Below, piece after piece: positions 2,478 to 63,104 of a DNA stretch of 64,000 nt. Source of the stretch: Octopus sinensis (lineage: Eukaryota); assembly GCF_006345805.1 (NCBI RefSeq), contig NC_042998.1, positions 49,972,001 to 50,036,000 of the forward strand. The letters are read 5' to 3'. Position 1 is the stretch's first letter. Each line of letters starts with the position of its first letter. Under the pieces are notes generated by a model that made no database searches, was not told the DNA's origin, and saw only the letters and a list, made by a program, of their open reading frames with translations. Position numbers and translations under genes: made by a program.

Positions 2478-2702
2478 GGCGAGCTGGCAGAATCGTTAGC
2501 ACGCCAGGCGAAATGCTTAGCGGTATTTTGTCTGCTGCTACATTCTGAGTTCAAATTCCGCCGAGGTCGACTTTGCCTTTCATCCTTTCGGGGTTGATAA
2601 ATAAAGTACCAGTTACGCACTGGGGTCGATGTAATCAACTTAATCCCTTTGTCTGTCGTTGTTTGTCCCCTGTGTTTAGCCCCTTGTGGGTAGTAAAGAA
2701 AT
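2478..2702 (+). mobile_element. S1 tRNA-derived SINE, full length
   Basis: A box TGGCAGAATCG, B box GAGTTCAAATTCC, tail ...GTAAAGAAAT. 16-bp TSD ATATATAATATAGGAT at 2462-2477 and 2703-2718. Confidence 0.9.
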
Positions 2703-3719: not shown

Positions 3720-4100
3720 AAATTTTAGCACTAGTTTTAGGTGAGGGATAAGTCGATTACATCGACCCTAGTGTTCAAATAATATTTCTTTTATCAAACC
3801 CGAAAGGATTAAAGGCAAAGTCGACCTCGGCGGAATTTGAACTCAGAACGTAGCGGAACACGAAATACCTATTTCTTTACTACCCACAAGAGGCTAAACA
3901 CTGAGGAGACAAACAGGGACAGACAGACGGATTAAGTCGATTACATCGACCCCAATGCGTAACTGGTACTTATTTAATCGACCCCGAAAGTATGAAAGGC
4001 AAAGTCGACCTCGGCGGAATTTCGAACACAGAACGTAACGGCAGGCGAAATACGGCTACGGATTTCGCCCGGTGTGCTAACGTTTCTGCCAGCTGTCCGC
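3720..4100 (-). mobile_element. S1 SINE dimer
   Basis: Two bodies with the GAAATAGGTATTTCG junction at 3861-3880. Confidence 0.8.
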
Positions 4101-4132
4101 CGTGCACACACGTACCCCCTCCCACACGCACG

Positions 4133-4830: not shown

Positions 4831-5227
4831 GTTTCTTTATTAGCCACGCAGGGCTGAACACAGAGGGGACACATTACAAAATAGAGCTTTTCTTTTTGGG
4901 GAGAAAAAAAAGGAAAAAGAAAAAAGGGGAGTAAGTTTTCGATCAAAAGGGATCGTAAAAAGGAGAGAGAGAGAAGTGGGGAGAGAGAGGTGGAGAGTGG
5001 GAGAAGTGGGGAGAGAGAAGGGGAGAGAGAGAAGTGGAGGGAAAGAGAGGTGGAGAGAGAGAGAGAAGTGGGGAGAGAGAGAGGTGGGGAGAGAGAGAGG
5101 AGAGAGAGAAGTAGAGGGAGAGAGAGAGGTGGAGAGAGTGGGAGAGAGGTGGAGAGAGTCGACTATATCACCCCCAGTTATCAACTGGTACTTATTTTGT
5201 CGACCCCGAAAGAACGAAAGGCAAATG
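4831..5227 (-). mobile_element. Chimeric SINE: S1 central domain + CT-rich tract + Tx1-like LINE 3'UTR tail
   Basis: Minus strand: TTTGCCTTTCGTTCTTTCGGGGTCGACAAAATAAGTACC (S1 body, 5158-5227), then a pyrimidine tract, then TTTACGATCCCTTTTGATCG...AAAAGAAAAGCTCTA...CAGCCCTGCGTGGCTAATAAAGAAAC, matching 18945-19082. Confidence 0.75.
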
Positions 5228-5853
5228 TAAGTACTGGGATCGATTCATTCGAAAAAAAATTCTTCAATGCAAGGCCCCAAACATGGCTGCAGTCTAATGA
5301 CGCAAACAAGTAAAAGATAGTAGATGTGACTGTGTGGTAAGAAGCTTGCTTTCCATTTACATGGTTCCGGGTTCAGTTCCACTGCGTGACACCTTGGGCA
5401 AGTGTCTTCTATTTTAGCTTCAGGCGGGCTAAATTTTTGTAAGTGGATTGGGTAGACGGAAACTGAAAGAAGCCCGGTGTATATATGTGTGTGTGTTTGT
5501 GTCTATCTTCGGCAAAAGAACCCGATAGAATAAGTAATGGGATTAAATAACAAGTGTGGGGTCGATTTGTTCGACTAAAACCCTTCAAGGCGGTGCTCCA
5601 GCATGGCTGCAGTCAAATGACTGAAACAAATAAAACAATTATATAAACATATAAAGAACACACAGACACACACATACGTGCAAACACACACACGTGCAAA
5701 AACACACACACGAACACATACACACATAAACATACAATTCTGTACCATAGTGGATAACAGACGCTCAAGGTGACATGAAATGTGACTGAAGCACGAACCA
5801 TGTGGTCGGGAAGCAAGTTTCATAATACAGTCTCACCTTCGCCTATATATATG

Positions 5854-9874: not shown

Positions 9875-9974
9875 NNNNNNNNNNNNNNNNNNNNNNNNNN
9901 NNNNNNNNNNNNNNNNNNNNNNNNNNNNNNNNNNNNNNNNNNNNNNNNNNNNNNNNNNNNNNNNNNNNNNNNNN
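9875..9974. other. Assembly gap (100 N)
   Basis: Run of N. Confidence 1.
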
Positions 9975-16580: not shown

Positions 16581-16654
<74 letters not shown>

Positions 16655-17055
16655 GTGACCAAGGTTACCGTGGTCTTTTTCGTAGGCTTTTCTTCCCACG
16701 GATAAACCTTACTTGCTTTCCCCTTTACACCATATATCATAACACTGTGATACACGATCCCTATTGATCGTTCTTTTTTTTTTCCTCTTCCCCTTTTTTC
16801 CCCTTTTTTCTTCTTTTTTCATTTCTCTTTCCTTTTGTTCCTTTTCCTTTTCTTTTTTTTCTTTTTATTCTTTTTATTTTAATCAATTTTTTTTGTTTTT
16901 GTTCTTTTCTTCCCTTTTACGATCCCTCTTGATCAAAAACCTACGCCACCCACTTTTTTTTCTTTTGTTTTTTGTTCTCTTCATCCTCCAAAAGAAAAGC
17001 TCTACCTTGTAACTTGTCCCATCTGTGTGCAGCCCTGTGTGGCCAATAAAGAAAC
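16655..17055 (+). mobile_element. 3'UTR-only copy of the same Tx1-like LINE
   Basis: TGACCAAGGTTACCGTGG...AATAAAGAAAC aligns to 18772-19082. Preceded by (TATC)n 16581-16654 and followed by (TATC)n 17056-17155. Confidence 0.85.
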
Positions 17056-17155
<100 letters not shown>

Positions 17156-18697
17156 GGACATCTATCGAGACCTTTCGACATTGCACGTTCGGTCCGTCAG
17201 GGATGCCCCCTCTCGGCGCTTCTATACGTATTGACTCTTGAGCCACTACTGCGGAAGCTGGCGACTCTAAGGGGCATCCCGCGAGAATTGGGATGCGGGA
17301 CGAGCGTGTCTGCATACGCGGACGACGTCACCGTCATAGTGTCTAGCCACGAACACATCGAGCTGGTCGGCGAGACACTGAAAAACTACGAAGCGGTGAC
17401 AGGAGCGAAAATCAACCGGGAAAAGTCAGTGGGCTTGCGACTAGGCACCTGGAGAAGCAAGCCCATGCCGTCCACCAGCGCCTCCGTCGTGGGACGCTGA
17501 CCGACGGCCCGTTGAGTTGCTCGGGGTCTGGTTTGGTCCGGACCTCCAAGTGGAGAAGAACTGGAACGAGATAACGAGTAGGGTGGTCACTCTCGCCCGG
17601 CAATGGGCCGAGAGGAAACTGTCCCTAAAAGGTCGAGCGGAGGTGGCGAACACGTACATCGCGTCCGTCATCTACTACCGCCTGACCGTCGTACATTGTC
17701 CCGACCCTACCATCACCAAACTACAACCATTCTCTTTCGTTCTTGTGGAAAGGATGCGTCCCGATGGTCAGGCGATCCATTTGCTGTCAACACCACGTTT
17801 AAAGGAGGGGCTGGGCATGCCGTGGTTGATGATGCGCAGACACGCGCTGAGACTGCGACATCTCTGGCTCTATGTAGACGACGGTGAACAGGTGTGGTCG
17901 CCGTTTGTGAGGCACGCTTTCCCGCAGCTCGTCTCCATGACCGAACTGCAGTCGTGGATCAAAAAGAGGCCGAGGAAGGGCGAATGGCACCGCGAGTGTC
18001 GCGTTGCTCTCAAGCAACTCTGCCGTCCTGGGTCGACCTTAAGTGACTTCAACACAACCAAAGCATTCTATAGGGGTTTAGTGGAGGGGAGGTACGACGA
18101 CGAGCTCGGGGCGAACCTGGACGTCGACGAGGAGTACCTGACCCGCCTGTTCAGGACGACTTTCGGGCCAGGGCCCATGGACAACTTCCAGAGATCCCTG
18201 GCCTGGCAGTGCTACCGAGAAGCGCTACCCGTTCGGGATAAGCTCTACAGACACGGCTCGAGAAACACGGGGCCGACCTGCCCGAGATGCGGTCAGAGCG
18301 ACGAAACCGTTCTGCACGCACTCGTTCAGTGTCCAACAATTTCCGACCTGTGGGCTTATGTCGAACAACTGCTGTCACGTGTGGGACGAGTCGGTTTATC
18401 AGCTGAGTCTATCGTCAATATTGTCACGCCTCCTTCCTTCAAACGGAAGGAAGAGCTATTTTCATCATCCTTGTGGCTATGGCGAAAGAATGTATCTGGT
18501 GGACGCGTCTGAAAGGATTGGAGACAAACACTTTCCTCTCTGGTCAATCTCTCATCAACTTCTTCAAGTACCACTTGAAAAGGAAAGTGAGAGTAGAGAG
18601 GCAAGTTTTGTCTAGCGAATGTTTTAAAAAAAGATGGGTGAATGTAGCAAGAATGGCACGTATGAATGACGAAGCCACCTTGAGCATAATCCTATGA
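17156..18697 (+). pseudogene. Frameshifted ORF2 remnant (RT C-terminal half, thumb, CCHC zinc finger)
   Basis: Stitched from ORFs 17027..17500, 17517..18512 and 18473..18697. Frameshifts near 17498-17512, 17725-17810 and ~18455; the alternative frames restore FLWKGCVPMVRRSICCQH and AMAKECIWWTRL. Confidence 0.85.
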
Positions 18698-19082
18698 ACC
18701 CAGAAATTGAAAACAGAGATTTGCTTATTTGCAAAAAAAAAAAAAAAAAAAAATAATAAATGTGACTTCATTGACCGAGGTTACCGTGGTCTTTTCCGTA
18801 GGCTTTTCTTTCCACGGTAACCTCACCTGTCCTCCCCTTTACACTTCATATTGACATTTCTGTGATAACGATCCCTATTGATCAATTTTTTTTTTTTTCT
18901 TTTTCCTCTACCCCTTTTTTTAACTCCCCCTTTTTTGTCCTCTTTCTCTCCTTTTACGATCCCTTTTGATCGAAACTCCCCCCCTTTCCTTTTTCTTTTT
19001 TTTTTTTTAAACCTTCAAAAGAAAAGCTCTACCTTGTAATTTGTTCTATCTGTGTGCAGCCCTGTGTGGCTAATAAAGAAAC
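17156..19082 (+). mobile_element. 5'-truncated non-LTR retrotransposon (LINE), L1/Tx1 clade
   Basis: Starts mid-RT (GHLSRPFDIARSVRQGCPLSALLYVLTLEPLLRKL...SAYADDVTVIV), then thumb region, zf-RVT-like motif ALPVRDKL...CPRCGQSDETVLHALVQC and stop at 18695-18697. A ~385-nt pyrimidine-rich 3'UTR ends AATAAAGAAAC. Flanked on both sides by (TATC)n. Confidence 0.9.
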
Positions 19083-19109
19083 ATATCTATCTATCTATCT
19101 ATCTATATA

Positions 19110-19161
<52 letters not shown>

Positions 19162-19195
19162 CCTATCTACTTATCTATCTATCTATTGATGTATG

Positions 19196-19236: not shown

Positions 19237-19640
19237 TCTCTTTACTCTCTTTTACTTGTTTCAGTCATTTGACTGCGGTCATGCTGGAGCACCGCCTTTA
19301 GTCGAGCAAATCGACACCAGGACTTATTTTTTGTAAGCCTAGTACTTATTCTATCTGTCTCTTTTGCCGAACCGCTAAGTTACGGGGACGTAAGCACACC
19401 AGCATCAGCTGTGAAGCGATGTTGGGGTGGGGACAAACACAGACATACAACCCCCCACACATATATATACATATATACGACGGGCTTCTTTCAGTTTTCG
19501 TCTACCAAATCCACTCACAAGGCTTTGGTCGGCCCGAGGCTATAGTAGAAGACACTTGCCCAAGGTGCCACGCAGTGGGACTGAACCCGGAACCATGTGG
19601 TTAGTAACCAATTTACCTACCACACAGCCACTCCTGCGCC
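19236..19640 (-). mobile_element. OK-like SINE, full length
   Basis: Reverse complement of the 35765-36171 family. Confidence 0.85.
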
Positions 19641-20165: not shown

Positions 20166-21061
20166 ATATATATATATAGATATATATGTTGTGTTTTTTG
20201 TGCTTTCTTGTTTGGATTAACTTTATATAGATATATACATACATAGATACGAATATATATACGTGTATGTATAGCTGTATATATGTATATATATATATGT
20301 GTGTGTTTATATGCATGTATATATGTATATATATATATATATAGTATGCATTGAATACACACACACAAACACGCACACATGCATACACACACACACACAC
20401 ACATAATGTATGTGTTGGAGAGACGAAAAGGGAAAACGAGTGTGGGGAATTTCTTCTTACAGATTCTTTGATTTATGATTTGAAATGTATATTGTGAAAA
20501 TTATTAAATATAGCTTTAAACAAACTGTTCTGTTTTAAATTTATTGACTTAAATAATGAATAAAAATAAAGCTGATGTAAATAAATAAATGTATAGCACC
20601 GCACCAAGAGAAAAAAAAAGCGAAGTATGTATCACACGATGAGTAATATTCGGAATAAATTATTGTAGTAGGAACTAGACATAACTTGCATGTATGTATG
20701 TATTTGTTTTGGCAGAGTACAATATCATATATATATATATATAGATATATATATATATATATATATATGAATACATAAACACACATATCAATGTATGTGT
20801 ATACATGTATTGGCAGAAGACAATATATGTACACTCACATACACACATACACGCACAAACTGAACTGGCAAAAAGAAAAAGTTCAGAGCTTCTGCAAACA
20901 GTTTGAATAAGCTACCTCCGTCGAAAATTCAAATTTCACTGTCAACAAATTATGATAAATATGAACATCACCAGTGGAAGGTCATAGAAAGCCATGAAGT
21001 ATAAACTTTCTTTATAACTGCTTGGTGTGAAATTTACATAGGTAGTTGGGGTGATATATTC

Positions 21062-21860
21062 TTTTCTACTCTAAGGCACATAGGCACGAAAGTATTGTGG
21101 AGCGGGCCAGTCGATTACATCGACCCCATTACGCAACTGGTACTTAATTTATCGACACCGAAAAGGTGAAAGGCAAAGTCGACCTCAGCGGAATTTGAAC
21201 TCAGTACGTAAAGACAAATCAAATACAGCTAAACATTTCGCCCGGCGTGTTAACGTTTCTTATTTCTTTACTGACCACAAGGGGCTAAACACAGAGAGGA
21301 CAAACAAGGACAGACAAACGGATTAAGTCGATTATATCGACCCCAGTGCGTAACTGGTACTTATTTAATCGACCCCGAAAGGATGAAAGGCAAAGGCGAC
21401 GCCGGCAGAATTTGAACTCAGAACGTAGCGGCAGACGAAATACCTATTTCTTTACTACCCACAAGAGGCTAAACACAGAGAGAACAAATAAGGACAGAGA
21501 GACGGATTAAGTCGATTATATCGACCCAAATGCGTAACTGGTATTTATTTAATCGACCCCGAAAGGATGAAAGGCAAAGTCGACCTCGGCGGAATTTGAG
21601 CTCAGAACGTAGCGGCAGACGAAATACCTATTTGTTTACTACCCACAACGGGCTAAACACAGAGGAGACAAACAAGGACAGACAGACGGATTAAGTCGAT
21701 TAGATCGACCCCAGTGCACAACCGGTACTTAATTTATCGACCCCGAAACGATGAAAAGCAAGTCGACCTCGGTGGAATTTGAACTCAGAACGTAACGGCA
21801 GACGAAATACGGCTATGCATTTCGCCAAGCGTGATAACGGTTCTGCCAGCTCGCCTCCTT
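21062..21860 (-). mobile_element. S1 SINE head-to-tail tetramer
   Basis: One complete head, four bodies, three A-type tails and a terminal B-type tail. Flanking GGGGTGATATA direct repeat at 21048-21058 and 21866-21876. Confidence 0.85.
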
Positions 21861-26480: not shown

Positions 26481-26710
26481 ATTTCTTTATTACCCACAAG
26501 GGGCTAAACACAGAGGGGACAAACAAGGACAGATATAGGTATTAAGTCGATTACATCGACCCCAGTGCGTAACTGGTACTTAATTTATCGACCCCGAAAG
26601 GATGAACGGCAAAGTCGACCTCGGCGGAATTTGAACTCAGAACGTAGCGGCAGACGAAATACCGCTAAGCATTTCGCCCGGCGTGCTAACGTTTCTGCCA
26701 GCTCGCCGCC
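26481..26710 (-). mobile_element. S1 tRNA-derived SINE, full length
   Basis: 19-bp TSD TTATTGAAGTCTGTTACCT at 26462-26480 and 26711-26729. Confidence 0.92.
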
Positions 26711-31124: not shown

Positions 31125-31820
31125 TTCAAATTCTGGTACAGCACCAACAGTTTTAGGGAGGGAGTAAGTCGATTTCAATGACTCCAGTGTTCGACTGGAA
31201 CGCTATTTTATCGATCTCGAAAGGTTGGAAGCCAAAGTCGACCCTGGCGGAATTTGAACTCAGAACGTTAAGTAGGAAGAAATGCTCCTATTTTGTCTCA
31301 CGCTCCAACGGTTCTTCAGCTCGCCGCCTTAAAATAATGGAAAATAACCCTTTCTACAAAGGGCACAAGGCCTGAAATTTGGTGGGAGGTAGGCAATCAA
31401 TTAGATGTAACCCAGTATGCAACTATATATACTTATTTTATCGACCCCGAAGAATGAAAGGCAATGTCGACCCCAGCGGCATTTGAACTCAGAACGTAAA
31501 GACAAACGAAATACCGCTAAACACTTCGCCCGGCGTGTTAACGTTTCTACCAGGATGAAAAGCAAACTCGACCTTGGCAAAATTTGAACTGAGAACGTAA
31601 AAACGGACGAAATACCTATTTCTTTACTTCCCACAAGGGGCTAAACACAGAGAGGATAAACAAGGACAGACAGTGTGTAACTGGTACTTATTTAATCGAC
31701 CCCGAAAGGATGAAAGGCAAAGTCGACCTCGGCGGAATTTGAACTCAGAGCGTAACGGCAGACGAATTACGGCTACGCATTTCGCCCGGCGTGCTAACGT
31801 TTCTGCCTACTCTCCGCCTT
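31125..31820 (-). mobile_element. Cluster of S1 SINEs (monomer plus multimer)
   Basis: Repeated S1 bodies and B boxes; fixed junction at ~31610-31625. Confidence 0.8.
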
Positions 31821-35314: not shown

Positions 35315-35740
35315 CATCGTGCTGGTAGAATCGTTATCACGCTGGGCAAAATGCTTAACGGCATTTCGTTCGTCTTTACATTTTGAGTTCAAATTCTGCT
35401 GGTGTCGAATTTGCCTTTCATCCTTTCAGGATCGATAAAATAGGTACCAGTTTAATTCTGGGGTCAATATAATTGACTTACACCCTTCCCAAACTTACTG
35501 GTCTTGTGTCAAAATTTGTAATCAGTATTTCGAAATATTAAGGCAACGTGCTGGCAGAATCTTTAGCGCAACGGACAAAATGCTTAGCGACATTTCATCT
35601 GTCTTTACGTTCTGAGGTCGACTTTGCCTTTCATCCTTTCGGGATTGATAAATTAAGTACCAGTTGAGCACTGAATTCGATGTATTCGACTTCTCCCCTC
35701 CTTGAAATTGCTGGCTTTGTGCCAAAATTTCAAACCAAGA
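35315..35740 (+). mobile_element. Two tandem S1 SINEs with B-type tails
   Basis: Heads GTGCTGGTAGAATCG and GTGCTGGCAGAATC; tails ...CTTGTGTCAAAATTTG and ...TTTGTGCCAAAATTT. Confidence 0.75.
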
Positions 35741-35764: not shown

Positions 35765-36171
35765 GGCGCAGGAGTGACTGTATGGTAAGTAGCTTGCTTA
35801 CCAGCCACATAGTTCCGGGTTCATTCCCACTGCGTGGCACCTAGGGCAAGTGTCTTCTACTATAGCCTCGGGCCGACCAAATCCTTGTAAGTGGATTTGG
35901 TAGACGGAAAGTGAAAGAAGCCTGTCGTATATATGTATATGTATATATGTATGTGTATGTGTGTCTGTCTGGGTTCGTCCCCCCAACATCGCTTCACAAC
36001 CGATGTTGGTGTGTTTAGGTCCCCGTAACTTAGCGGTTCGGCAAAAGAGATCGATAGAATAAGTACTAGGCTTACAAGGGATAAGTCCTGGGGTCGATTT
36101 GCTCGAGTATAGGCGGTGCTCCAGCATGGCCGCAGTCAAATGACTGAAACCAGTAAAAGAGTTAAAAAGAG
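35765..36171 (+). mobile_element. OK-like tRNA-derived SINE, full length (~405 bp)
   Basis: GGCGCAGGAGTGACTGTATGGTAAG head, GGGCAAGTG CORE-like motif, tail GACTGAAACCAGTAAAAGAG. Family name from memory. Confidence 0.8.
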
Positions 36172-36551: not shown

Positions 36552-36775
36552 TAAAAGGCAGCGAGCTGGCAGAAACGTTAGCACGTCGGGCGAAATGCGT
36601 AGCCGTATTTCGTCTGCCGCTACGTTCTGAGTTCAAATTCCGCCGAGGTCGACTTTGCCTTTCATCCTTTCGGGGTCGATAAATTAAGTATCAGTTACGC
36701 ACTGGGGTTGATGTAATCGACTTAATCCGTTTGTTTGTCCTTGTTTGTCCCCTATGTGTGGGTAGTAAGAAAATA
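36552..36775 (+). mobile_element. S1 tRNA-derived SINE, full length, inserted in an RTE-like fragment
   Basis: 22-bp TSD TATAATTTAGGTTATTCAAATT at 36530-36551 and 36776-36797. An empty-site copy exists at 34321-34454. Confidence 0.92.
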
Positions 36776-37817
36776 TATAATTTAGGTTATTCAAATTCCA
36801 ATACAGGGACTTTTTTTCATTATGAGCGTTGGGCAAAACGCCTTGCAGTATTTCTTTCGACAATTTACGTTCTGATTTCAAATTCCACCGAGAATATCCC
36901 TCTGAGAATGAGAAAATAGTTTTACACACGTACTGGGATCGATGGTATGAATTACCTGTTCCCGCTCAAAGTTTCGGTCTTGTTCCTACATCAAAAGGCA
37001 TCAATTTAACGATTTTAATTGTCTTCGATTTCCTGTTTGAAGCGTAACACTCAAGCACATCGTGACAAGCAGAATAATTATTATGTATTCTCACGTATGA
37101 AATATTTACCCCACAACCACCCCACTGTCATGTAAATTTTTGCTCCTCTTATCCTCTCCCTGCTCCTAGTGTGTAAAAAATTTGCCCCCGGTTGAGTATC
37201 ACTGATTTACGTAGACCTCAATATCCAACAGCGTCAGTCACGGTCATTTGTTTCTTCCTATCAGCCTCCTCTCTCTGGTGCTTCCTACTTTTCCGCCTCC
37301 TCATCCAGTATCACCATCACCCTTTATCACCTCCTTCAGTACGTCTTCTTCCATCTCCTACGCTACCGCTCCCTCATCTTCTGTCACGTCTTCCCCAGCA
37401 TCGTCTTATAACAACCACTAATTTCTACCTTCGCCTAAATAATGAGGTCTGCTTGTCTCCCGTTTCTGTCTCCAAATTAAAAATGGACACGGCTATCTTT
37501 AAACTGATTTACTTTTAGATTTAAGTAACTAAATATCTTTTATTTATTTTATTTATCGATTGGTTTCTACTTTAAATGATGTTTGTAGAAGATGAGAGAG
37601 GAAGATACAGGCAGTTTAATTTTTGTCGATTTCTTTCTTATTTACATTATTTTGAATTTAATGGTTTATTTTTGTAAACAAACATGTATTTGATGATGTC
37701 GCTTGCGTGGTCGTTACTGACGGTGAAGTAGTTTACTCTCGCTTCAATCCTGTTGAAGCTCACCGATGATTATAGGCGCTCCAGCTATGACACCCTCATC
37801 ATTAAATTTCAGACAGA

Positions 37818-38395
37818 TTCTTTTCTACTCTAGGCACAAGGCCCGAAATTTTGGGGAAGGGGGCCAGTCGATTAGATCGACTCCAGTACGCAACTGGTAC
37901 TTAATTTATTCACCTCGAAATGATGAAGGGCAAAGTCGACCATGGCTGAATTTGAACTCAACGTAATGATAGACGAAATACTTATTTCTTTACTACCCAC
38001 AAGGGGCTAAACATAGAGTGGACAAACAAGGACAGACAAACGGATTAAGTCGATTACATCGACCCCAGTGCGTAACTGGTACTTAATTTATTCACCTCGA
38101 AAGGATGAAGGGCAAAGTCGACCTTGGCTGAATTTGAACTCAACGTAATGATAGACGAAATACTTATTTCTTTACTACCCACAAGGGCTAAACATAGAGG
38201 GGACAAACAAGGACAGACATAGGTATTAAGTCGATTACATCGACCCCAGTGCGTAACTGGTACTTAATTTATCGACCTCGATAGGATGAAAGGCAAAGTC
38301 GACCTCGGTGGAATTTGAACTCACAACGTAACGGCAGACGAAATACCGCTAAGCATTTCGCCCGGCGTGCTAACGTTTCTGCCAGCTGGCCGCCT
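37818..38395 (-). mobile_element. S1 SINE trimer
   Basis: Three bodies joined at GAAATAAGTATTTCG junctions; terminal B-type tail. Confidence 0.85.
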
Positions 38396-41082: not shown

Positions 41083-42960
41083 CTTACAGAGAGAGAAAAG
41101 GAAAGAGAGAACAGGAGAGAGAGAGAAAGAGAAAAAAGGAGAGAGAGAGAGTGTTCTGAAATATACTTTCACTCATGTAACAAAAGATTACAACCTACAT
41201 CGGGTTGTTACGCTTCTTGTATCCTACTTAGAAACTGTGTTCAACATATAACTTGTGTCTTTGTAAGATAAATCATGCGAAACACATGTAAAGATTGAAC
41301 AAATATTGGTCTCAAATTTTAGCACAAGGCCAACAATTTCGAGGGGTGGTTAAGTTGATTATATCAACTCCATTGCTGAGTACTTATTTTATCGACATCG
41401 AAAATATAAAGGGCAAACTCGACCCCGGTAGCATTTGAACCAAGAACGGAAAGATAGACGAAATGCCGCTAAGCATTTTAACCAGCGGTTCTGCTAGTTC
41501 GCCGCCTTCGGATGAAACGAATATTACAGTAGCATAGTGCGTGGTTTGCGGACAGCACATGACAACCAAATCTTACGCAACATTAATGAAGTGTATAACA
41601 CCCACACACGTGCGTATGCACACATACACGCTCACACACGCATACACACACACAGTTACAGACACATACGCACACATAATATACAACCATCACTCGTAAT
41701 CGAGTATGAGTACCTGTCTTCGCGCTCTGTACATTTCCTCTGTGTTTGTCACTTGGGTTACCGTTTTTCACTAAAGTCACAAGTTCTCACATGCCCAGTG
41801 TTGTGATTTGATAAACCGAAACTGTCTTTCTCTGTCTCCCTCCCTCCCCCCCTCTCTCTCTCTCACACACACACACGCACATACACACGCGCACACACAC
41901 ATATAGATGGATGAATTTCGATATATAGATGTGTGTATGTGTATGCGCATGTTTATGGTCTAAAAACCTTTGTATTTTTCTTTGACGTCCGTATTTCTCT
42001 TGTTTCTTGGCGGGCCAGCTGAGTTTTAACTCAAAATGTAAAGAACCTTAATTAAATACATATAGGAAATTAACCTAGTATAGTATAAAATTTTTGCTGG
42101 GAGCTCAAGTCCGGCAAATTTTTGCTATTCGACCTGCATGAATGATTTGATTACTGTGATCAAATATTTGTATTGCGCATGAGATTATTCCCGCCATCAA
42201 ATCGACATTGTTTGTACAGGTGCACGGTGTGCCAAATATCAGGTGCCAAGGTGATCATACAACAATGTGAGGTGAAACGATTTGCTCAAAAAACACAATG
42301 CACCACTCGCTCCCAGAATGGAACCCACGATCTCGAGATTGCGAGTGCAACAACCTAACCACTTTGCCACTCTCTCAGTATATATAATTCTTTTCTACTC
42401 TAGGCACAAGGCCCGGAAATTTGGATAAAGAGGCCAGTCGATTAGATCGACCTCAGTAAGCAACTGGTACTTAATTTATCGACCAAAAGGATGAAAAGCA
42501 AAGTTGGCCTCGGCGGAATTTGAACTCAGAACGTAAACTCAGTATATATAATTACAGTAGCACATCTGTTTCTCTTCTCACTGAAAACGATTTATTCAGA
42601 CACGTGATTTTCATGTATATTCAAGGACCATTACAAGACATAATATTCATTCTCTTCAAATATGCCAACTTGTACCAAATATTTTTTTTTTATTTGTCCT
42701 ATTATATATTTGAAGATGAATTCTTCACAATGTAAACAAAAATACTCATGTAGAAATTATTTATCCAACATATGTTTGTGTGCATTCATGTGTGCATATG
42801 GATGTCTGTTTAAACACCCACATATATGTATATACATCTATATATATATATATATATTATATATATATATAATATATATATAATAATATTAGGGAAAAAA
42901 TCCAAATTTACAGGGAAAAAATCAGATTTAGGATTAAATTCCAATTTTATAGTAAAATAT

Positions 42961-43326: not shown

Positions 43327-43551
43327 ATATATATATTTCTTTACTAGCCACAAGGGGCTAAACACAGAGGGGACAAAGAAGGACAGATAAACGGATTAAG
43401 TCGATTATATCGAACCCAGTGCGTAACTGGTACTTAATTTATCGACCCCGAAATGATAAAAGGCGGAATTTGAACTCAGAACGTAACGGCAGACGAAATA
43501 CTGCTACGCATTTCGCCCGGCGTGCTAACGTTTCTGCCAGCTCGCCGCCTT
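43327..43551 (-). mobile_element. S1 SINE with small internal deletion
   Basis: Head ...GCTCGCCGCCTTA; tail hairpin AGCC-CCTTGT-GGCT. Further partial S1 copies at ~810-935, 13880-14260, 16030-16170, 41310-41510, 42390-42540, 49575-49750, 50535-50650, 51598-51810 and 52225-52320. Confidence 0.8.
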
Positions 43552-46460: not shown

Positions 46461-47427
46461 GAAATGAGAAATAGAAGATGCATTAGATAGTGTCGTTACA
46501 TTCACTGATAAAAAATAAGCATGGTGATTATGGCTGGGTTACTTTTGATCATGGGGTTAAAAATCGTTTTACCAAAATTAAATTTCGCCTAAAGCTGATC
46601 AATAATAACAATCACATGTCGTTTCTCAATCAGGATGGTAGAATCCAATGTGAAAGACTCTTAGCATCAAAACAGGAGCAGGTCAAAAAACACATAGACG
46701 TTCCCACGCTGTCTTCTAGGAGTATTTTCTTCTGAACTTTACGAAAATATAGTTTCGCTTTCATTTTATTATTCTATATAGGTCCAGGGATACCACTTTC
46801 AACATTTTTTTTTACTTATTTCAGTCATTTGGCTGTGCTTATGCTGGAGCACCGCTTTGGAGGGTTTTAATCAAAGAAAGGTCCTAGGACATTTTTAAAA
46901 CCTAGTATTATCGGTATTTTTTTTTTTTTTGCCGAACGGTTAAGTTATTGGGGCATAAACACAACACCGGTTGTCACACCGTGATGGGAGGACAAACACA
47001 GTACAATGCCAAACATTGACAACATACACACATACATACATACACACACACACATATTCTTTTGTTCCAGTCATTTGACTGCAGCCTTGCTGGAGCATCG
47101 CTTTTAGTCTAACAAATCGACCCCAGGACTTATTCTTTGTAAGCCTAGTACCTATTCCATCCGTCTCTTTTTGCCGAACCACTAAGTTATGGAGACGCAA
47201 ACGCACCAACATCGGTTGACAAGCGATGGGGGAGGGGGAAACACAGACATACAAACTTATACAAGTATACGACGGGCTTCTTTCAGTTTCCGTCTACCAA
47301 ATCCACTCACAAGGCTTTTGTCGGTCCGAAGCTATAGTAGAAGTCACTTGCCCAAGGTGCCACGCAGTGGGATTGAACTCAGAACCATGTGGTTGGAAAG
47401 CAGGCTTCTTGCCACACACCCACGCCT

Positions 47428-47519
<92 letters not shown>

Positions 47520-51496: not shown

Positions 51497-51817
51497 TATT
51501 ATCATTATTATCATCATCAATATTATTTATTTATTTATTTATTATTATTGTTGTTGTTGTTATTATTATTATTGTTGTTGATGTTGTTGTTGTTAAGGGG
51601 GCGAACCGGCAGCATCGTTAGCACCACAGACAAAAACACTTTGTAGCATTTTGTCCGCCTTTACGATCTGGGTTCCAGTTCCATCCAGGTTGATTTTTAC
51701 CTTTCGTCCTTTCGAGGTCGATAAAATAAGGATCAGTTACGCATTGCAGGGCGATGAAATTGACTATGCCGCCCTGCTCCAGAATTTCAGATCTAGTGCC
51801 TATAGTAGAAAGCATTA

Positions 51818-62704: not shown

Positions 62705-63104
62705 TTACTCTTTTTTAGTCTTTTACTCTTTTACTTGTTTCAGTCATTTGACTGCGGCCAACAAATCGACCCCCGGACTTGTTTTTTGTAAGCCTAGTAC
62801 TTATTCTATCGGTCTCTTTTTGCCGAACCGCTAGTTACGGGGACGTAAGCACACCAGCATCGGTTGTCAAGCAATGTTGAGGGGACAAACACAGACACAC
62901 AAACATATACACACACATACAATATATATATATACATATATACGACGGGCTTTTTTCAGTTTCCGTCTACCAAATCCACTCACAAAGCTTTGGTTGGTCC
63001 GAGACTATAGTAGAAGACACTTGCCCAAGGTGTCACGCAGTGGGACTGAACCCATGACCATGCGGTTCGCAATAAAGCTACTTACCACACAGCCACTCAT
63101 ACGC
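62705..63104 (-). mobile_element. OK-like SINE
   Basis: Same family. Further copies at ~207-345, 5325-5635, 30720-31002, 46800-47430 and 63950-64000. Confidence 0.8.

What the first reader, a model, noticed from the sequence alone, without database searches (positions are those of the whole stretch)
17014..17055. The abundant S1 SINE shares its 3' terminus with the Tx1-like LINE: candidate LINE-SINE partnership
Seen: LINE end TTGTCCCATCTGTGTGCAGCCCTGTGTGGCCAATAAAGAAAC (17014-17055) versus SINE end TTGTCCCCTCTGTGTTTAGCCCCTTGTGGGTAATAAAGAAAT (reverse complement of 26481-26522) gives 34/42 identity with no gaps. Both ends are exactly co-terminal and can form a small GCC(C)/GG(G)Y hairpin. S1 copies have 16-22 bp TSDs. 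Established: stringent-type LINEs recognise their own 3' tail, and partner SINEs borrow it. This is typical of L2/CR1/RTE, whereas mammalian L1 is poly(A)-dependent. Inference: this Tx1-clade element or a close relative is the autonomous driver of S1. I do not recall this pairing being described.
Basis: partly seen in the sequence, partly recalled or inferred. Interest (0 to 1): 0.8.

Follow-up and report, generated by a model that had tools for sequence, protein, structure and literature searches.

The report
Octopod SINE borrows L1/Tx1-like LINE tail
The most abundant short repeat in this octopus-type genome window ends in the same roughly 45-base hairpin-containing tail as an L1/Tx1-like LINE, so that LINE family is very probably what copies it; the mechanism is ordinary, but I found no published partner LINE for octopus SINEs.

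Summary
17014-17055 (+) matches the reverse complement of 26481-26522 at 34/42 with no gaps. Every S1 3' end in the window scores 30-34/42, while random windows reach at most 27.

The tail is the true 3' terminus of the LINE. The A-tract at 18733-18760 is internal. In five related LINE copies from other assemblies, including Argonauta hians, the ORF2 stop is followed directly by a 3' UTR; four of them reach the same terminal motif, and in the fifth the contig ends about 30 nt short of it.

S1-LINE similarity covers only the last 40-53 nt and is always co-terminal. S1 copies have 16-22 bp target-site duplications and no poly(A).

The shared module holds a 4-bp stem with an invariant CTTGT loop. 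The stem shows compensatory changes across LINE lineages and SINE tail classes.

Argonauta SINEs and LINEs share an even closer tail. Distant LINE relatives in assemblies without S1 keep the hairpin, so the module is LINE-native.

The LINE has an AP endonuclease, RT and zf-RVT, and its closest solved relative is human L1 ORF2p. Placement in Tx1 rather than L1 rests on indirect evidence only.

Verdict: a well-supported stringent-type LINE-SINE pair. It is a new member of a known kind, with no prior description found.

The parts
17014..17055 (+). Terminal 42 nt of LINE copy 1 (the flagged interval). Hairpin AGCC[CTGTGT]GGCC lies at 17031-17044, followed by AATAAAGAAAC.
16656..17055 (+). LINE copy 1: a 5'-truncated copy made only of the 3' UTR (about 400 bp), lying between two (CTAT)n tracts.
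   Evidence: Homologous to 18772-19082. Carries the conserved UTR inverted repeat ACCGTGG...CCACGG at 16667.
16581..16654 (+). (ATCT/CTAT)n microsatellite directly 5' of LINE copy 1.
17056..17155 (+). (CTAT)n between LINE copies 1 and 2. It is either the tail of copy 1 or the target of copy 2. The 5' junction of copy 2 (ggaCATCTATCgag) has microhomology to it.
17156..19082 (+). LINE copy 2, 5'-truncated inside the RT domain. RT motifs lie at 17156-17500, with a frameshift near 17500. ORF 17517-18512 carries zf-RVT, with a second frameshift near 18440. The ORF2 stop TGA is at 18695-18697. The 3' UTR is 18698-19082, with an internal A-tract at 18733-18760. The terminal tail is 19041-19082 (hairpin 19058-19071).
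   Evidence: (RVT_1 1.4e-12, zf-RVT 4e-08).
19083..19190 (+). (ATCT)n microsatellite following LINE copy 2.
4831..4973 (-). LINE copy 3: the last ~143 nt of the 3' UTR, ending AATAAAGAAAC with no microsatellite. Its tail, GTGTCCCCTCTGTGTTCAGCCCTGCGTGGCTAATAAAGAAAC, is intermediate between the LINE and S1 versions.
26481..26710 (-). Full-length S1 SINE (97% identical to the in-window consensus), flanked by a 19-bp TSD AGGTAACAGACTTCAATAA.
2478..2702 (+). Full-length S1 copy with a 16-bp TSD ATATATAATATAGGAT.
36557..36775 (+). S1 copy with a small deletion in its tail and a 22-bp TSD.
43335..43549 (-). S1 copy with tail A, inserted in TG/TA simple sequence; the TSD is ambiguous.
21058..21858 (-). 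Multimeric S1 array: a full S1, then two units of S1 positions 48-230 (all tail A), then a 5'-truncated unit with tail C. The whole array is flanked by an 11-bp TSD TATATCACCCC.
37817..38394 (-). Second multimeric S1 array with the same architecture: a full S1, a 49-230 unit, and a unit ending in tail C.

Best explanation
S1 is a Pol III-type SINE of about 230 nt. It has a degenerate tRNA-like head with a B-box-like GAGTTCAAATTCC, a central domain shared with other octopod SINEs, and no TTTT run. Its last 40-53 nt are a copy of the 3' terminus of an L1-superfamily, Tx1-like LINE.

The shared module consists of a CTGTGT motif, a 4-bp G/C-rich stem closed by the loop CUUGU, and the A-rich terminus A(A/G)TAAAGAAAY.

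I propose that the LINE ORF2 protein recognises this stem-loop and terminus on its own RNA and starts target-primed reverse transcription exactly at the end of the module (stringent-type recognition, no poly(A) needed). S1 RNA carrying the same module would then be copied in trans. This gives co-terminal copies with L1-like 16-22 bp target-site duplications.

Shown here: the homology, its co-terminality, that it belongs natively to the LINE, its conservation in a second octopod, covariation in the stem, the TSDs, and the absence of poly(A).

Inferred: binding by ORF2p, trans-mobilisation, and which exact LINE subfamily drives S1.
For: 1. The match is 34/42 ungapped, all S1 ends score 30-34/42, and random windows reach at most 27.
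2. Local alignment of the S1 consensus to seven LINE 3' UTRs always gives one block ending within 1 nt of both termini, 34-53 nt long in S1 (up to 61 nt on the LINE side).
3. The tail is contiguous with ORF2. In L003 the ORF end runs into the UTR with no A-tract. L001, L002 and L007 have UTRs of 210-330 nt ending CTGTGT..GCCCTTGTGGCYAATAAA(A)GAAAT.
4. Argonauta hians SINEs end CTGTGTTCGGCCCTTGTGGCTAATAGAGAAAT. An Argonauta LINE copy ends CTGTGTCGGCCCTTGTGGCTAATAAAGAAAT.
5. Stem covariation: LINE GGCC/GGCY, S1 GCCC/GGGT, tail C GGGC/GCCT, tail B TGGC/GCCA. 86.7% of cells pair against 64% in shuffles (0/500 shuffles reach it). The covariation score is 0.538 against 0.196 (0/500), and slid controls give at most 0.16.
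6. LINE relatives of 37-43% amino-acid identity, in assemblies with no S1, keep the CTTGT hairpin in their 3' UTR.
7. S1 TSDs are 19, 16 and 22 bp, and neither element has a poly(A) tail.
8. The S1 consensus lacks TTTT, whereas the LINE UTR is full of T-runs.
9. LINE tails mostly keep AATAAA, while the SINE tails have AGTAAA or AATAGA. This fits a Pol II signal that a Pol III SINE no longer needs.
Against: - There is no functional test.
- Identity between S1 and the LINE copies in this window is only 74-85%. An Argonauta lineage (L007) and window copy 3 are closer to S1 than copies 1 and 2, so the true driver is probably a sister subfamily not present in the window.
- Two of the three window LINE copies sit in (CTAT)n, whereas S1 copies show no such site preference.
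- The stem has only 4 bp. Individual folds are not significantly more stable than shuffles (z from +0.2 to -2.8). In the window's own LINE copies the stem is shifted by one base and has a 6-nt loop.
- The sequences used for the covariation test were chosen and trimmed by me, and some are single decayed copies.
- ARAGORN and Rfam do not recognise the S1 head as a tRNA.
- Other LINE clades of this genome could not be examined.
Confidence: 0.75

Rival explanations
1. The LINE really ends at the A-tract 18733-18760. The roughly 320-400-bp unit carrying the shared tail would then be a separate non-autonomous element that happens to lie downstream, so the LINE and S1 share nothing.
For: LINE copy 1 (16656-17055) starts almost exactly where the A-tract ends in copy 2, so the unit does occur alone.
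Against: In L003 (79-84% protein identity) the ORF2 stop is followed, at the same distance and with no A-tract, by the same unit (TTGACTGAGGTTAACCGTGGTCTTTT...CCACGG). In L001, L002 and L007 the UTR directly after ORF2 ends in the shared motif. A UTR-only copy is the expected result of 5' truncation.
Confidence: 0.03
2. The direction is reversed or the link is indirect. Either the LINE lineage captured the tail from an S1-type SINE, or both took it from a third element. The tail then says nothing about which enzyme recognises it.
For: Tail swapping is evidently frequent here. S1-type SINEs in the window carry at least three different tails on one body.
Against: The hairpin with the CTTGT loop and its C-rich upstream context sit in the 3' UTR of LINE relatives of only 37-43% identity. 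These come from assemblies in which about 58 kb of fetched sequence holds no S1. The terminal motif is conserved across LINE lineages of 54-84% identity in at least two species. Even if a capture had occurred, a tail kept at the terminus of an autonomous LINE must work with that LINE's own RT.
Confidence: 0.05
3. S1 is, or was, mobilised by a LINE of another clade that is abundant in octopuses (RTE-BovB, CR1, Dong-R4). The resemblance to the L1/Tx1-like tail would be a relic of an earlier partnership or of tail exchange between LINE clades.
For: Published octopus repeat surveys report RTE, CR1 and Dong-R4 as more abundant or more active than L1-Tx1 (PMC13282606, PMC8967140). The window contains no such LINE for comparison. 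The S1-to-window-LINE tail identity is only about 80%.
Against: Four independent S1 insertions have tail A as their 3' terminus, and three of them have clean 16-22 bp TSDs. From general knowledge, this is typical of L1-type endonuclease nicking and long for RTE or CR1. The co-terminal match and the compensatory stem changes indicate ongoing selection on this tail. Argonauta shows SINE and LINE tails evolving together.
Confidence: 0.12
4. The similarity is chance or low-complexity resemblance between two A/T- and GT-rich ends.
For: The terminus is A-rich, and the window is full of microsatellites.
Against: None of 200 random windows reaches 28/42, whereas all S1 ends reach 30-34. Degenerate-pattern scans expect 0 chance hits. 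The motif recurs at the LINE terminus in independent assemblies.
Confidence: 0.01

Closest known systems
Stringent-type LINE/SINE pairs such as eel UnaL2/UnaSINE1 and zebrafish ZfL2 (Kajikawa & Okada 2002; Hayashi et al. 2014, PMC4176376)
   Same: The SINE and LINE share a short co-terminal 3' module containing a stem-loop with a conserved loop and a variable, compensating stem. There is no poly(A). Short repeat units may follow the terminus, here (CTAT)n or (ATT)n on some LINE copies.
   Different: Those LINEs belong to the L2 clade, whereas this one is in the L1 superfamily. RT binding to the stem-loop was shown experimentally for them and is only inferred here.
L1-clade stringent pairs in plants and algae: maize LINE1-1_ZM with ZmSINE2/3, and Chlamydomonas L1-1_CR with SINEX-3_CR (Ohshima 2012, PMC3472496)
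   Same: An L1-group LINE whose conserved 3' end, with a stem-loop and compensatory mutations, is shared with SINEs. This shows that not all L1 relatives use relaxed poly(A) recognition.
   Different: Those elements end in poly(A) repeats and occur in green plants and algae. Here there is no poly(A), the host is an animal, and the element is Tx1-like.
SINEU mobilised by Tx1-Mar LINEs in crocodilians (Kojima 2015, PMC4494074)
   Same: A Tx1-clade LINE is proposed as the driver of a SINE family, and some Tx1 relatives prefer microsatellite targets.
   Different: That partnership was inferred from shared target preference and shared snRNA-derived 5' heads, not from a shared 3' tail. Here the link is the 3' tail, and S1 shows no shared target preference.
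Octopus SINEs OK, OR1 and OR2 (Ohshima & Okada 1994), and the 'tRNA-Deu', 'tRNA-Core' or 'unclassified' SINEs of octopus genome papers (PMC8967140, PMC13282606)
   Same: Abundant tRNA-type SINEs with a conserved central domain in octopods. S1 is probably one of them.
   Different: I could not obtain their sequences to test identity. None of the papers I could read assigns them a partner LINE.
Mammalian L1 with Alu/B1 (relaxed, poly(A)-dependent)
   Same: L1-superfamily enzyme architecture (APE + RT + C-terminal Cys-rich domain), with human L1 ORF2p as the best solved relative. TSDs are 16-22 bp.
   Different: There is no poly(A) on the LINE or the SINE. They share a specific sequence and structure rather than an A-tail. 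ORF1 of the Argonauta relative has a CCHC knuckle and no Transposase_22 domain.

Membership tests
LINE-SINE partnership through a shared 3' tail (stringent type) | The SINE 3' end is homologous to a LINE 3' end and co-terminal with it. | tested here: met
   34/42 ungapped, with all S1 ends at 30-34/42 against at most 27 in random windows. Local alignments end within 1 nt of both termini.
LINE-SINE partnership through a shared 3' tail (stringent type) | The shared segment is the genuine terminus of an autonomous LINE, contiguous with ORF2 and its 3' UTR. | tested here: met
   L003 runs from the ORF end into the UTR without an A-tract. L001, L002 and L007 UTRs end in the motif. The near-full-length Argonauta element has ORF1, APE, RT and zf-RVT.
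LINE-SINE partnership through a shared 3' tail (stringent type) | A conserved stem-loop in the tail, supported by compensatory changes. | tested here: met
   A 4-bp stem with the loop CTTGT. All four pairs show double-sided changes. The covariation score is 0.538 against 0.196 in shuffles (0/500), and slid controls give at most 0.16. Caveats: the stem is short, the sequences were hand-picked, and single-sequence folds are not significant.
LINE-SINE partnership through a shared 3' tail (stringent type) | The SINE has a Pol III head derived from tRNA, 7SL or 5S. | tested here: inconclusive
   ARAGORN finds no tRNA, and Rfam gives no hit at gathering threshold or at E-value up to 10. By eye there is a B-box-like GAGTTCAAATTCC and an A-box-like TTAGCACGCCGGG. 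The consensus has no TTTT terminator.
LINE-SINE partnership through a shared 3' tail (stringent type) | Dispersed copies are flanked by target-site duplications. | tested here: met
   TSDs of 19, 16 and 22 bp flank three full-length copies.
LINE-SINE partnership through a shared 3' tail (stringent type) | Overlapping activity periods of the SINE and the LINE. | not testable with these tools
   This needs genome-wide copy sets. Within the window, S1 copies are 74-97% identical to their consensus, and the three LINE UTR copies are about 80% identical to each other.
LINE-SINE partnership through a shared 3' tail (stringent type) | Trans-mobilisation of the SINE by the LINE protein, dependent on the tail. 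| not testable with these tools
   This requires a retrotransposition or RNA-binding assay.
L1 superfamily of non-LTR retrotransposons (L1 + Tx1 clades) | ORF2 has an N-terminal AP endonuclease, an RT and a C-terminal Cys-rich (CCHC, zf-RVT) domain. The RT is closest to L1 ORF2p. | tested here: met
   In the window: RVT_1 1.4e-12 and zf-RVT 4e-08. In the Argonauta relative: Exo_endo_phos 4e-12, RVT_1 1.9e-31 and zf-RVT 4.3e-06. In the PDB, human L1 ORF2p scores about 3e-51 against 1e-26 for R2.
Tx1 clade specifically | An RT-domain phylogeny (for example RTclass1) groups the element with Tx1 and not with L1 proper. | not tested
   No Tx1 reference sequences were available. Names attached to relatives were uninformative. 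Indirect support: mollusc-wide RT trees recover Tx1 as the L1-superfamily clade (PMC10294476), and octopus repeat surveys list 'L1-Tx1' and no plain L1 (PMC13282606, PMC8967140).
Tx1 clade specifically | Target-specific insertion, which many Tx1 families show, including microsatellite-specific ones. | tested here: inconclusive
   Two of three window copies lie head-to-tail inside (CTAT)n, with junction microhomology. Relatives also occur in same-orientation tandem (L001 copies a and b, the L008 repeat of 7.5-kb period, the L009 upstream UTR copy). Copy 3 and the Argonauta copies have no microsatellite, and the sample is tiny.
Tx1 clade specifically | ORF1 is not of the vertebrate L1 type (no Transposase_22) and carries a CCHC knuckle. 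| tested here: met
   ORF1 of the Argonauta relative gives only a weak zf-CCHC hit (E 0.0037, below Pfam's cut-off) and no Transposase_22. This distinguishes it from mammalian L1 but does not by itself define Tx1.
Relaxed, poly(A)-dependent L1 / Alu-type partnership | LINE and SINE copies end in poly(A), with no shared specific 3' sequence. | tested here: not met
   No poly(A) follows the terminus in three window LINE copies, four relatives or any S1 copy. A specific shared tail is present instead.

The most novel reading that the evidence does not exclude
Octopod genomes may hold a modular system in which one SINE body (head plus central domain) repeatedly swaps 3' tails. Each tail (A, B, C) would be copied from a different lineage of a single Tx1-like LINE clade. 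All the tails are built around the same recognition hairpin: a 4-bp covarying stem with an invariant CUUGU loop.

That would make a Tx1/L1-superfamily LINE with stringent, poly(A)-independent 3' recognition the engine behind the octopus-specific SINE expansion (about 8-12% of the genome). It would also be the first animal L1-group LINE shown to share its 3' stem-loop with SINEs.
Probability: 0.4. Interest if true: 0.6.

Novelty: new member of a known kind. Interest (0 to 1): 0.45.

Why it matters
SINEs are the largest repeat class in Octopus genomes, and their expansion is octopus-specific (PMC8967140, PMC13282606). The papers I could read leave their autonomous partner unassigned. The 2026 O. 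vulgaris annotation lists 893 'unclassified SINE' families.

Tying the main SINE to an L1/Tx1-like LINE through a co-terminal, hairpin-bearing tail has three consequences:
- It names the enzyme family that probably built about a tenth of these genomes.
- It provides a defined RNA element to mutate in retrotransposition or binding assays.
- It adds an animal example to the few known L1-group LINEs that use specific rather than poly(A) recognition. This bears on the idea that relaxed recognition in mammalian L1 is a derived state (PMC3472496).

For genome annotators it also gives a rule for classifying these SINEs.

Tried and rejected
- A scan of metagenome contigs with the LINE protein alignment found 83 pattern matches, but none was a true relative.
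- A look-up of P0004 found no contig.
- I tried to settle Tx1 versus L1 from names attached to relatives. The exhaustive representative search gave 62,561 hits, but the ten clusters I looked up carried no informative names.
- ARAGORN and Rfam do not recognise the S1 head as a tRNA.
- A full-text search for S1 sequence strings found no paper.
- The many 'TX1' mentions in Hayashi et al. 2014 turned out to be names of mutants.
- I considered that 4831-5460 (-) might be a second SINE family with a longer LINE-derived tail. I rejected this because the region is a one-off mosaic of an unrelated SINE, an S1 central-domain fragment, CT-rich simple sequence and a truncated LINE 3' end, with no second copy of the composite.
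- Fixed-length degenerate pattern scans missed most S1 tails because of 1-nt indels, so I replaced them with an identity scan.
- Single-sequence folding of the tails is not significantly better than shuffles. Only the comparative test supports the hairpin.

Full report
**1. What is at the coordinates**

17014-17055 (+) reads TTGTCCCATCTGTGTGCAGCCCTGTGTGGCCAATAAAGAAAC. The reverse complement of 26481-26522 reads TTGTCCCCTCTGTGTTTAGCCCCTTGTGGGTAATAAAGAAAT. They match at 34 of 42 positions without gaps.

I scanned the LINE 42-mer over both strands of the window. Apart from one indel-shifted copy at 28/42, every S1 3' end scores 30-34/42, and two further LINE tail copies score 39/42 (19041-19082, +) and 37/42 (4831-4872, -). 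In 200 Markov-1 random windows the best score averaged 23.8 and never exceeded 27. Pattern scans with dinucleotide shuffles expect 0 chance hits.

**2. Anatomy of the LINE region**

- The flagged interval is the end of a 400-bp copy (16656-17055) that consists only of 3' UTR. (CTAT)n lies on both sides of it (16581-16654 and 17056-17155).
- Directly after the second microsatellite a larger copy begins inside the RT domain, at 17156. Its first bases, ggaCATCTATCgag, are microhomologous to the microsatellite.
- This copy carries RT motifs (Pfam RVT_1, 1.4e-12) and a frameshift near 17500. A 331-aa ORF (17517-18512) holds the zf-RVT Cys-rich domain (4e-08). After a second frameshift near 18440, the ORF2 stop is at 18695-18697.
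- Its 3' UTR runs from 18698 to 19082, contains an A-tract at 18733-18760, and ends in the same tail, followed by (ATCT)n.
- A third copy, about 143 nt long, lies at 4831-4973 (-). It ends AATAAAGAAAC with no microsatellite.
- This is the only coding LINE in the window.

**3. Is the tail really the LINE's end?**

Related copies from other assemblies answer this.

- L003 is an ENA contig whose protein is 79-84% identical. Its ORF2 end aligns with the window's. It then continues, at the same distance and without any A-tract, into the same UTR unit. That unit includes the invariant inverted repeat ACCGTGG...CCACGG.
- L002 (65-67% identity) has a 270-nt UTR ending GGGCCCTTGTGGCCAATAAAAGAAAT, followed by (ATT)n.
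- Argonauta hians locus L001 holds a nearly full-length element. ORF1 has one CCHC knuckle. The AP endonuclease matches Exo_endo_phos at 4e-12. RT matches at 1.9e-31 and zf-RVT at 4.3e-06. Its UTR ends CTGTGTCAGCCAGGTGGCTAAGAAAGAAAT.
- About 110 bp downstream of that element lies a UTR-only copy ending CTGTGTCGGCCCTTGTGGCTAATAAAGAAAT.
- A second Argonauta lineage (L007) ends TCGTCCCCTCTATGTTTTTGCCCTTGTGGCTAATAAAAGAAAT. Over the full 42 nt this is very close to S1.

The A-tract is therefore internal, and the tail is the conserved terminus of this LINE group.

**4. The SINE**

- BLAST with an S1 copy finds 35 hits covering 7.7% of the window. Eleven units reach the S1 3' end.
- The in-window consensus is 230 nt. 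It has a B-box-like GAGTTCAAATTCC and contains no TTTT.
- ARAGORN and Rfam do not call its head a tRNA, so a tRNA origin is not demonstrated here.
No copy has a poly(A) tail.
- Local alignment of the consensus against seven LINE UTRs gives a single block in each case, 34-53 nt long in S1 and up to 61 nt in the LINE, ending within 1 nt of both termini.

**5. Independent replication in a second species**

In the Argonauta loci, SINEs with a different head but the same central domain end ...CTGTGTTCGGCCCTTGTGGCTAATAGAGAAAT. This is nearly identical to the Argonauta LINE terminus. SINE and LINE tails thus track each other within each species, as expected for partners.

**6. A conserved hairpin**

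The module contains a 4-bp stem closed by the loop CTTGT. The stem differs between lineages in a compensating way:

| Tail | 5' arm / 3' arm |
|---|---|
| LINE | GGCC / GGCY |
| S1 (tail A) | GCCC / GGGT |
| Tail C | GGGC / GCCT |
| Tail B | TGGC / GCCA |

On a 15-sequence alignment, 86.7% of cells pair against 64% in shuffles (0 of 500 shuffles reach that value). All four pairs show double-sided changes. The covariation score is 0.538 against 0.196 (0/500), and sliding the partner by 1-3 columns gives at most 0.16.

Caveats:
- The helix is short.
- I chose and trimmed the sequences, and some are single decayed copies.
- The window's own LINE copies use a one-base-shifted register with a 6-nt loop.
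- Single-sequence folds are not significantly more stable than shuffles.

**7. Direction of transfer**

LINE relatives of only 37-43% identity (L008-L011, from ENA assemblies) contain no S1 in about 58 kb of fetched sequence. They still carry the CTTGT hairpin in their 3' UTRs, preceded by the same C-rich context. The module is therefore LINE-native, and the SINEs acquired it.

**8. More than one tail**

S1-type SINEs in the window split after position ~166 into at least three tail classes:
- Tail A is S1 proper.
- Tail B is ...TGGCCTTGTGCCAAAATTTGAAACCAAT.
- Tail C is ...GGGCCTTGTGCCTAGAGTAGAAAAGAAT.

Tails B and C resemble the hairpin regions of the L009-type and L010/L011-type LINE UTRs. 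This hints that each tail class corresponds to a different lineage of the same LINE clade. The evidence for that is only suggestive.

**9. Clade of the LINE**

The domain architecture (APE + RT + zf-RVT) places it in the L1 superfamily. So does the best solved relative: human L1 ORF2p at about 3e-51, against R2 at 1e-26. ORF1 lacks Transposase_22 and has a weak CCHC knuckle.

I could not run a phylogeny with Tx1 references, and the names of relatives were uninformative. Three things favour Tx1:
- Mollusc-wide RT trees recover Tx1 as the L1-superfamily clade (PMC10294476).
- Octopus surveys list L1-Tx1 and no plain L1 (PMC13282606, PMC8967140).
- The copies lie head-to-tail in or next to microsatellites, which recalls the microsatellite-specific Tx1 families (PMC4494074).

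I put Tx1 membership at about 0.7.

**10. Mechanism**

The most likely mechanism is stringent-type target-primed reverse transcription. ORF2p would bind the stem-loop and terminus on its own RNA and start cDNA synthesis at ...AAAGAAAY. S1 RNA carrying the same module would be used in trans.

The homology, co-terminality, covariation, TSDs and absence of poly(A) are shown here. Binding and mobilisation are inferred.

LINE tails mostly keep AATAAA, whereas the SINE tails have AGTAAA or AATAGA. This fits a Pol II polyadenylation signal that a Pol III SINE no longer needs, but that reading is my inference.

A point against a simple one-to-one pairing is that the window LINE copies are only about 80% identical to S1 in the tail, and two of them lie in (CTAT)n, unlike S1. 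The actual driver is probably a sister subfamily.

**11. Prior knowledge and novelty**

- Shared-tail LINE/SINE pairs are textbook (PMC3747384).
- L1-clade stringent pairs are known in maize and Chlamydomonas (PMC3472496).
- A Tx1 LINE has been proposed to drive SINEU in crocodilians, on grounds of target preference (PMC4494074).
- I found no paper assigning a partner LINE to octopus SINEs. The 2026 O. vulgaris annotation leaves 893 SINE families unclassified.
- I could not check Repbase, Dfam or SINEBase.

I rate this a new member of a known kind and of moderate interest (0.45). It is useful for cephalopod genomics and gives a testable animal example of specific 3' recognition in the L1 group, but the mechanism is of an expected type.

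Noticed in passing
window 21058-21858 (-) and ~37817-38394 (-); also 3749-4101 (-), 31161-31818 (-): S1 occurs as head-to-tail multimers: a full S1, then one or two units that always start at S1 position ~48 (junction ...AAAGAAAT/AGGTATTTCG), then a last unit with a different tail (C or B). The 21-kb array is flanked as a whole by an 11-bp TSD. It therefore seems to have inserted as one unit, either as a composite SINE family or through RT template-switching onto the tail of a second RNA.
   Followed up: partly
window copies listed (e.g. 35547-35692 +, 41350-41478 -, 42436-42535 -, 51597-51765 +): SINEs with the S1 head and central domain fall into at least three tail classes (A, B, C). All keep the CTTGT-loop hairpin but differ in stem and terminus. 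Tails B and C resemble the 3' UTR hairpin regions of more distant LINE relatives (L009, L010, L011).
   Followed up: partly
window 16581-19190; L001 10014-10649; L008 (7547-bp period); L009 1150-1330 and 6746-7470: LINE copies of this group tend to lie in same-orientation tandem. In the window they sit inside (CTAT)n, with junction microhomology. This may reflect target preference for their own tails or for microsatellites, as in some Tx1 families, or it may be slippage-generated tails.
   Followed up: partly
window 16667-16701 and 18783-18817; L003 ~975-1015: A second conserved element lies in the LINE 3' UTR: the inverted repeat ACCGTGG...(~22 nt)...CCACGG(T), invariant in the two window copies that cover this part of the UTR and in L003. 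The inverted repeats CGATCCC..TTGATCG lie further downstream.
   Followed up: no
window 19499-19631 (+), 35774-35908 (-), 47289-47429 (+), 62962-63096 (+), 5326-5460 (-): A second abundant SINE-like family (…CTTGCCCAAGGTGCCACGCAGTGGGACTGAACCCGGAACCATGTGG…) is unrelated to the S1 head. Its 3' end and partner were not examined.
   Followed up: no
L001 SINE and LINE copies: In Argonauta all five SINE copies and one LINE copy are followed by CTAT right after ...GAAAT. In at least one copy the CTAT is part of the TSD. CTAT is also the unit of the microsatellite that follows the window's LINE copies.
   Followed up: partly
window 9875-9974: A run of 100 N, which is an assembly gap.
   Followed up: no
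protein P0004: A close relative of this cephalopod LINE ORF2 is deposited in NCBI as a protein of a Herbaspirillum metagenome-assembled genome. This is almost certainly eukaryotic contamination of that bin.
   Followed up: no
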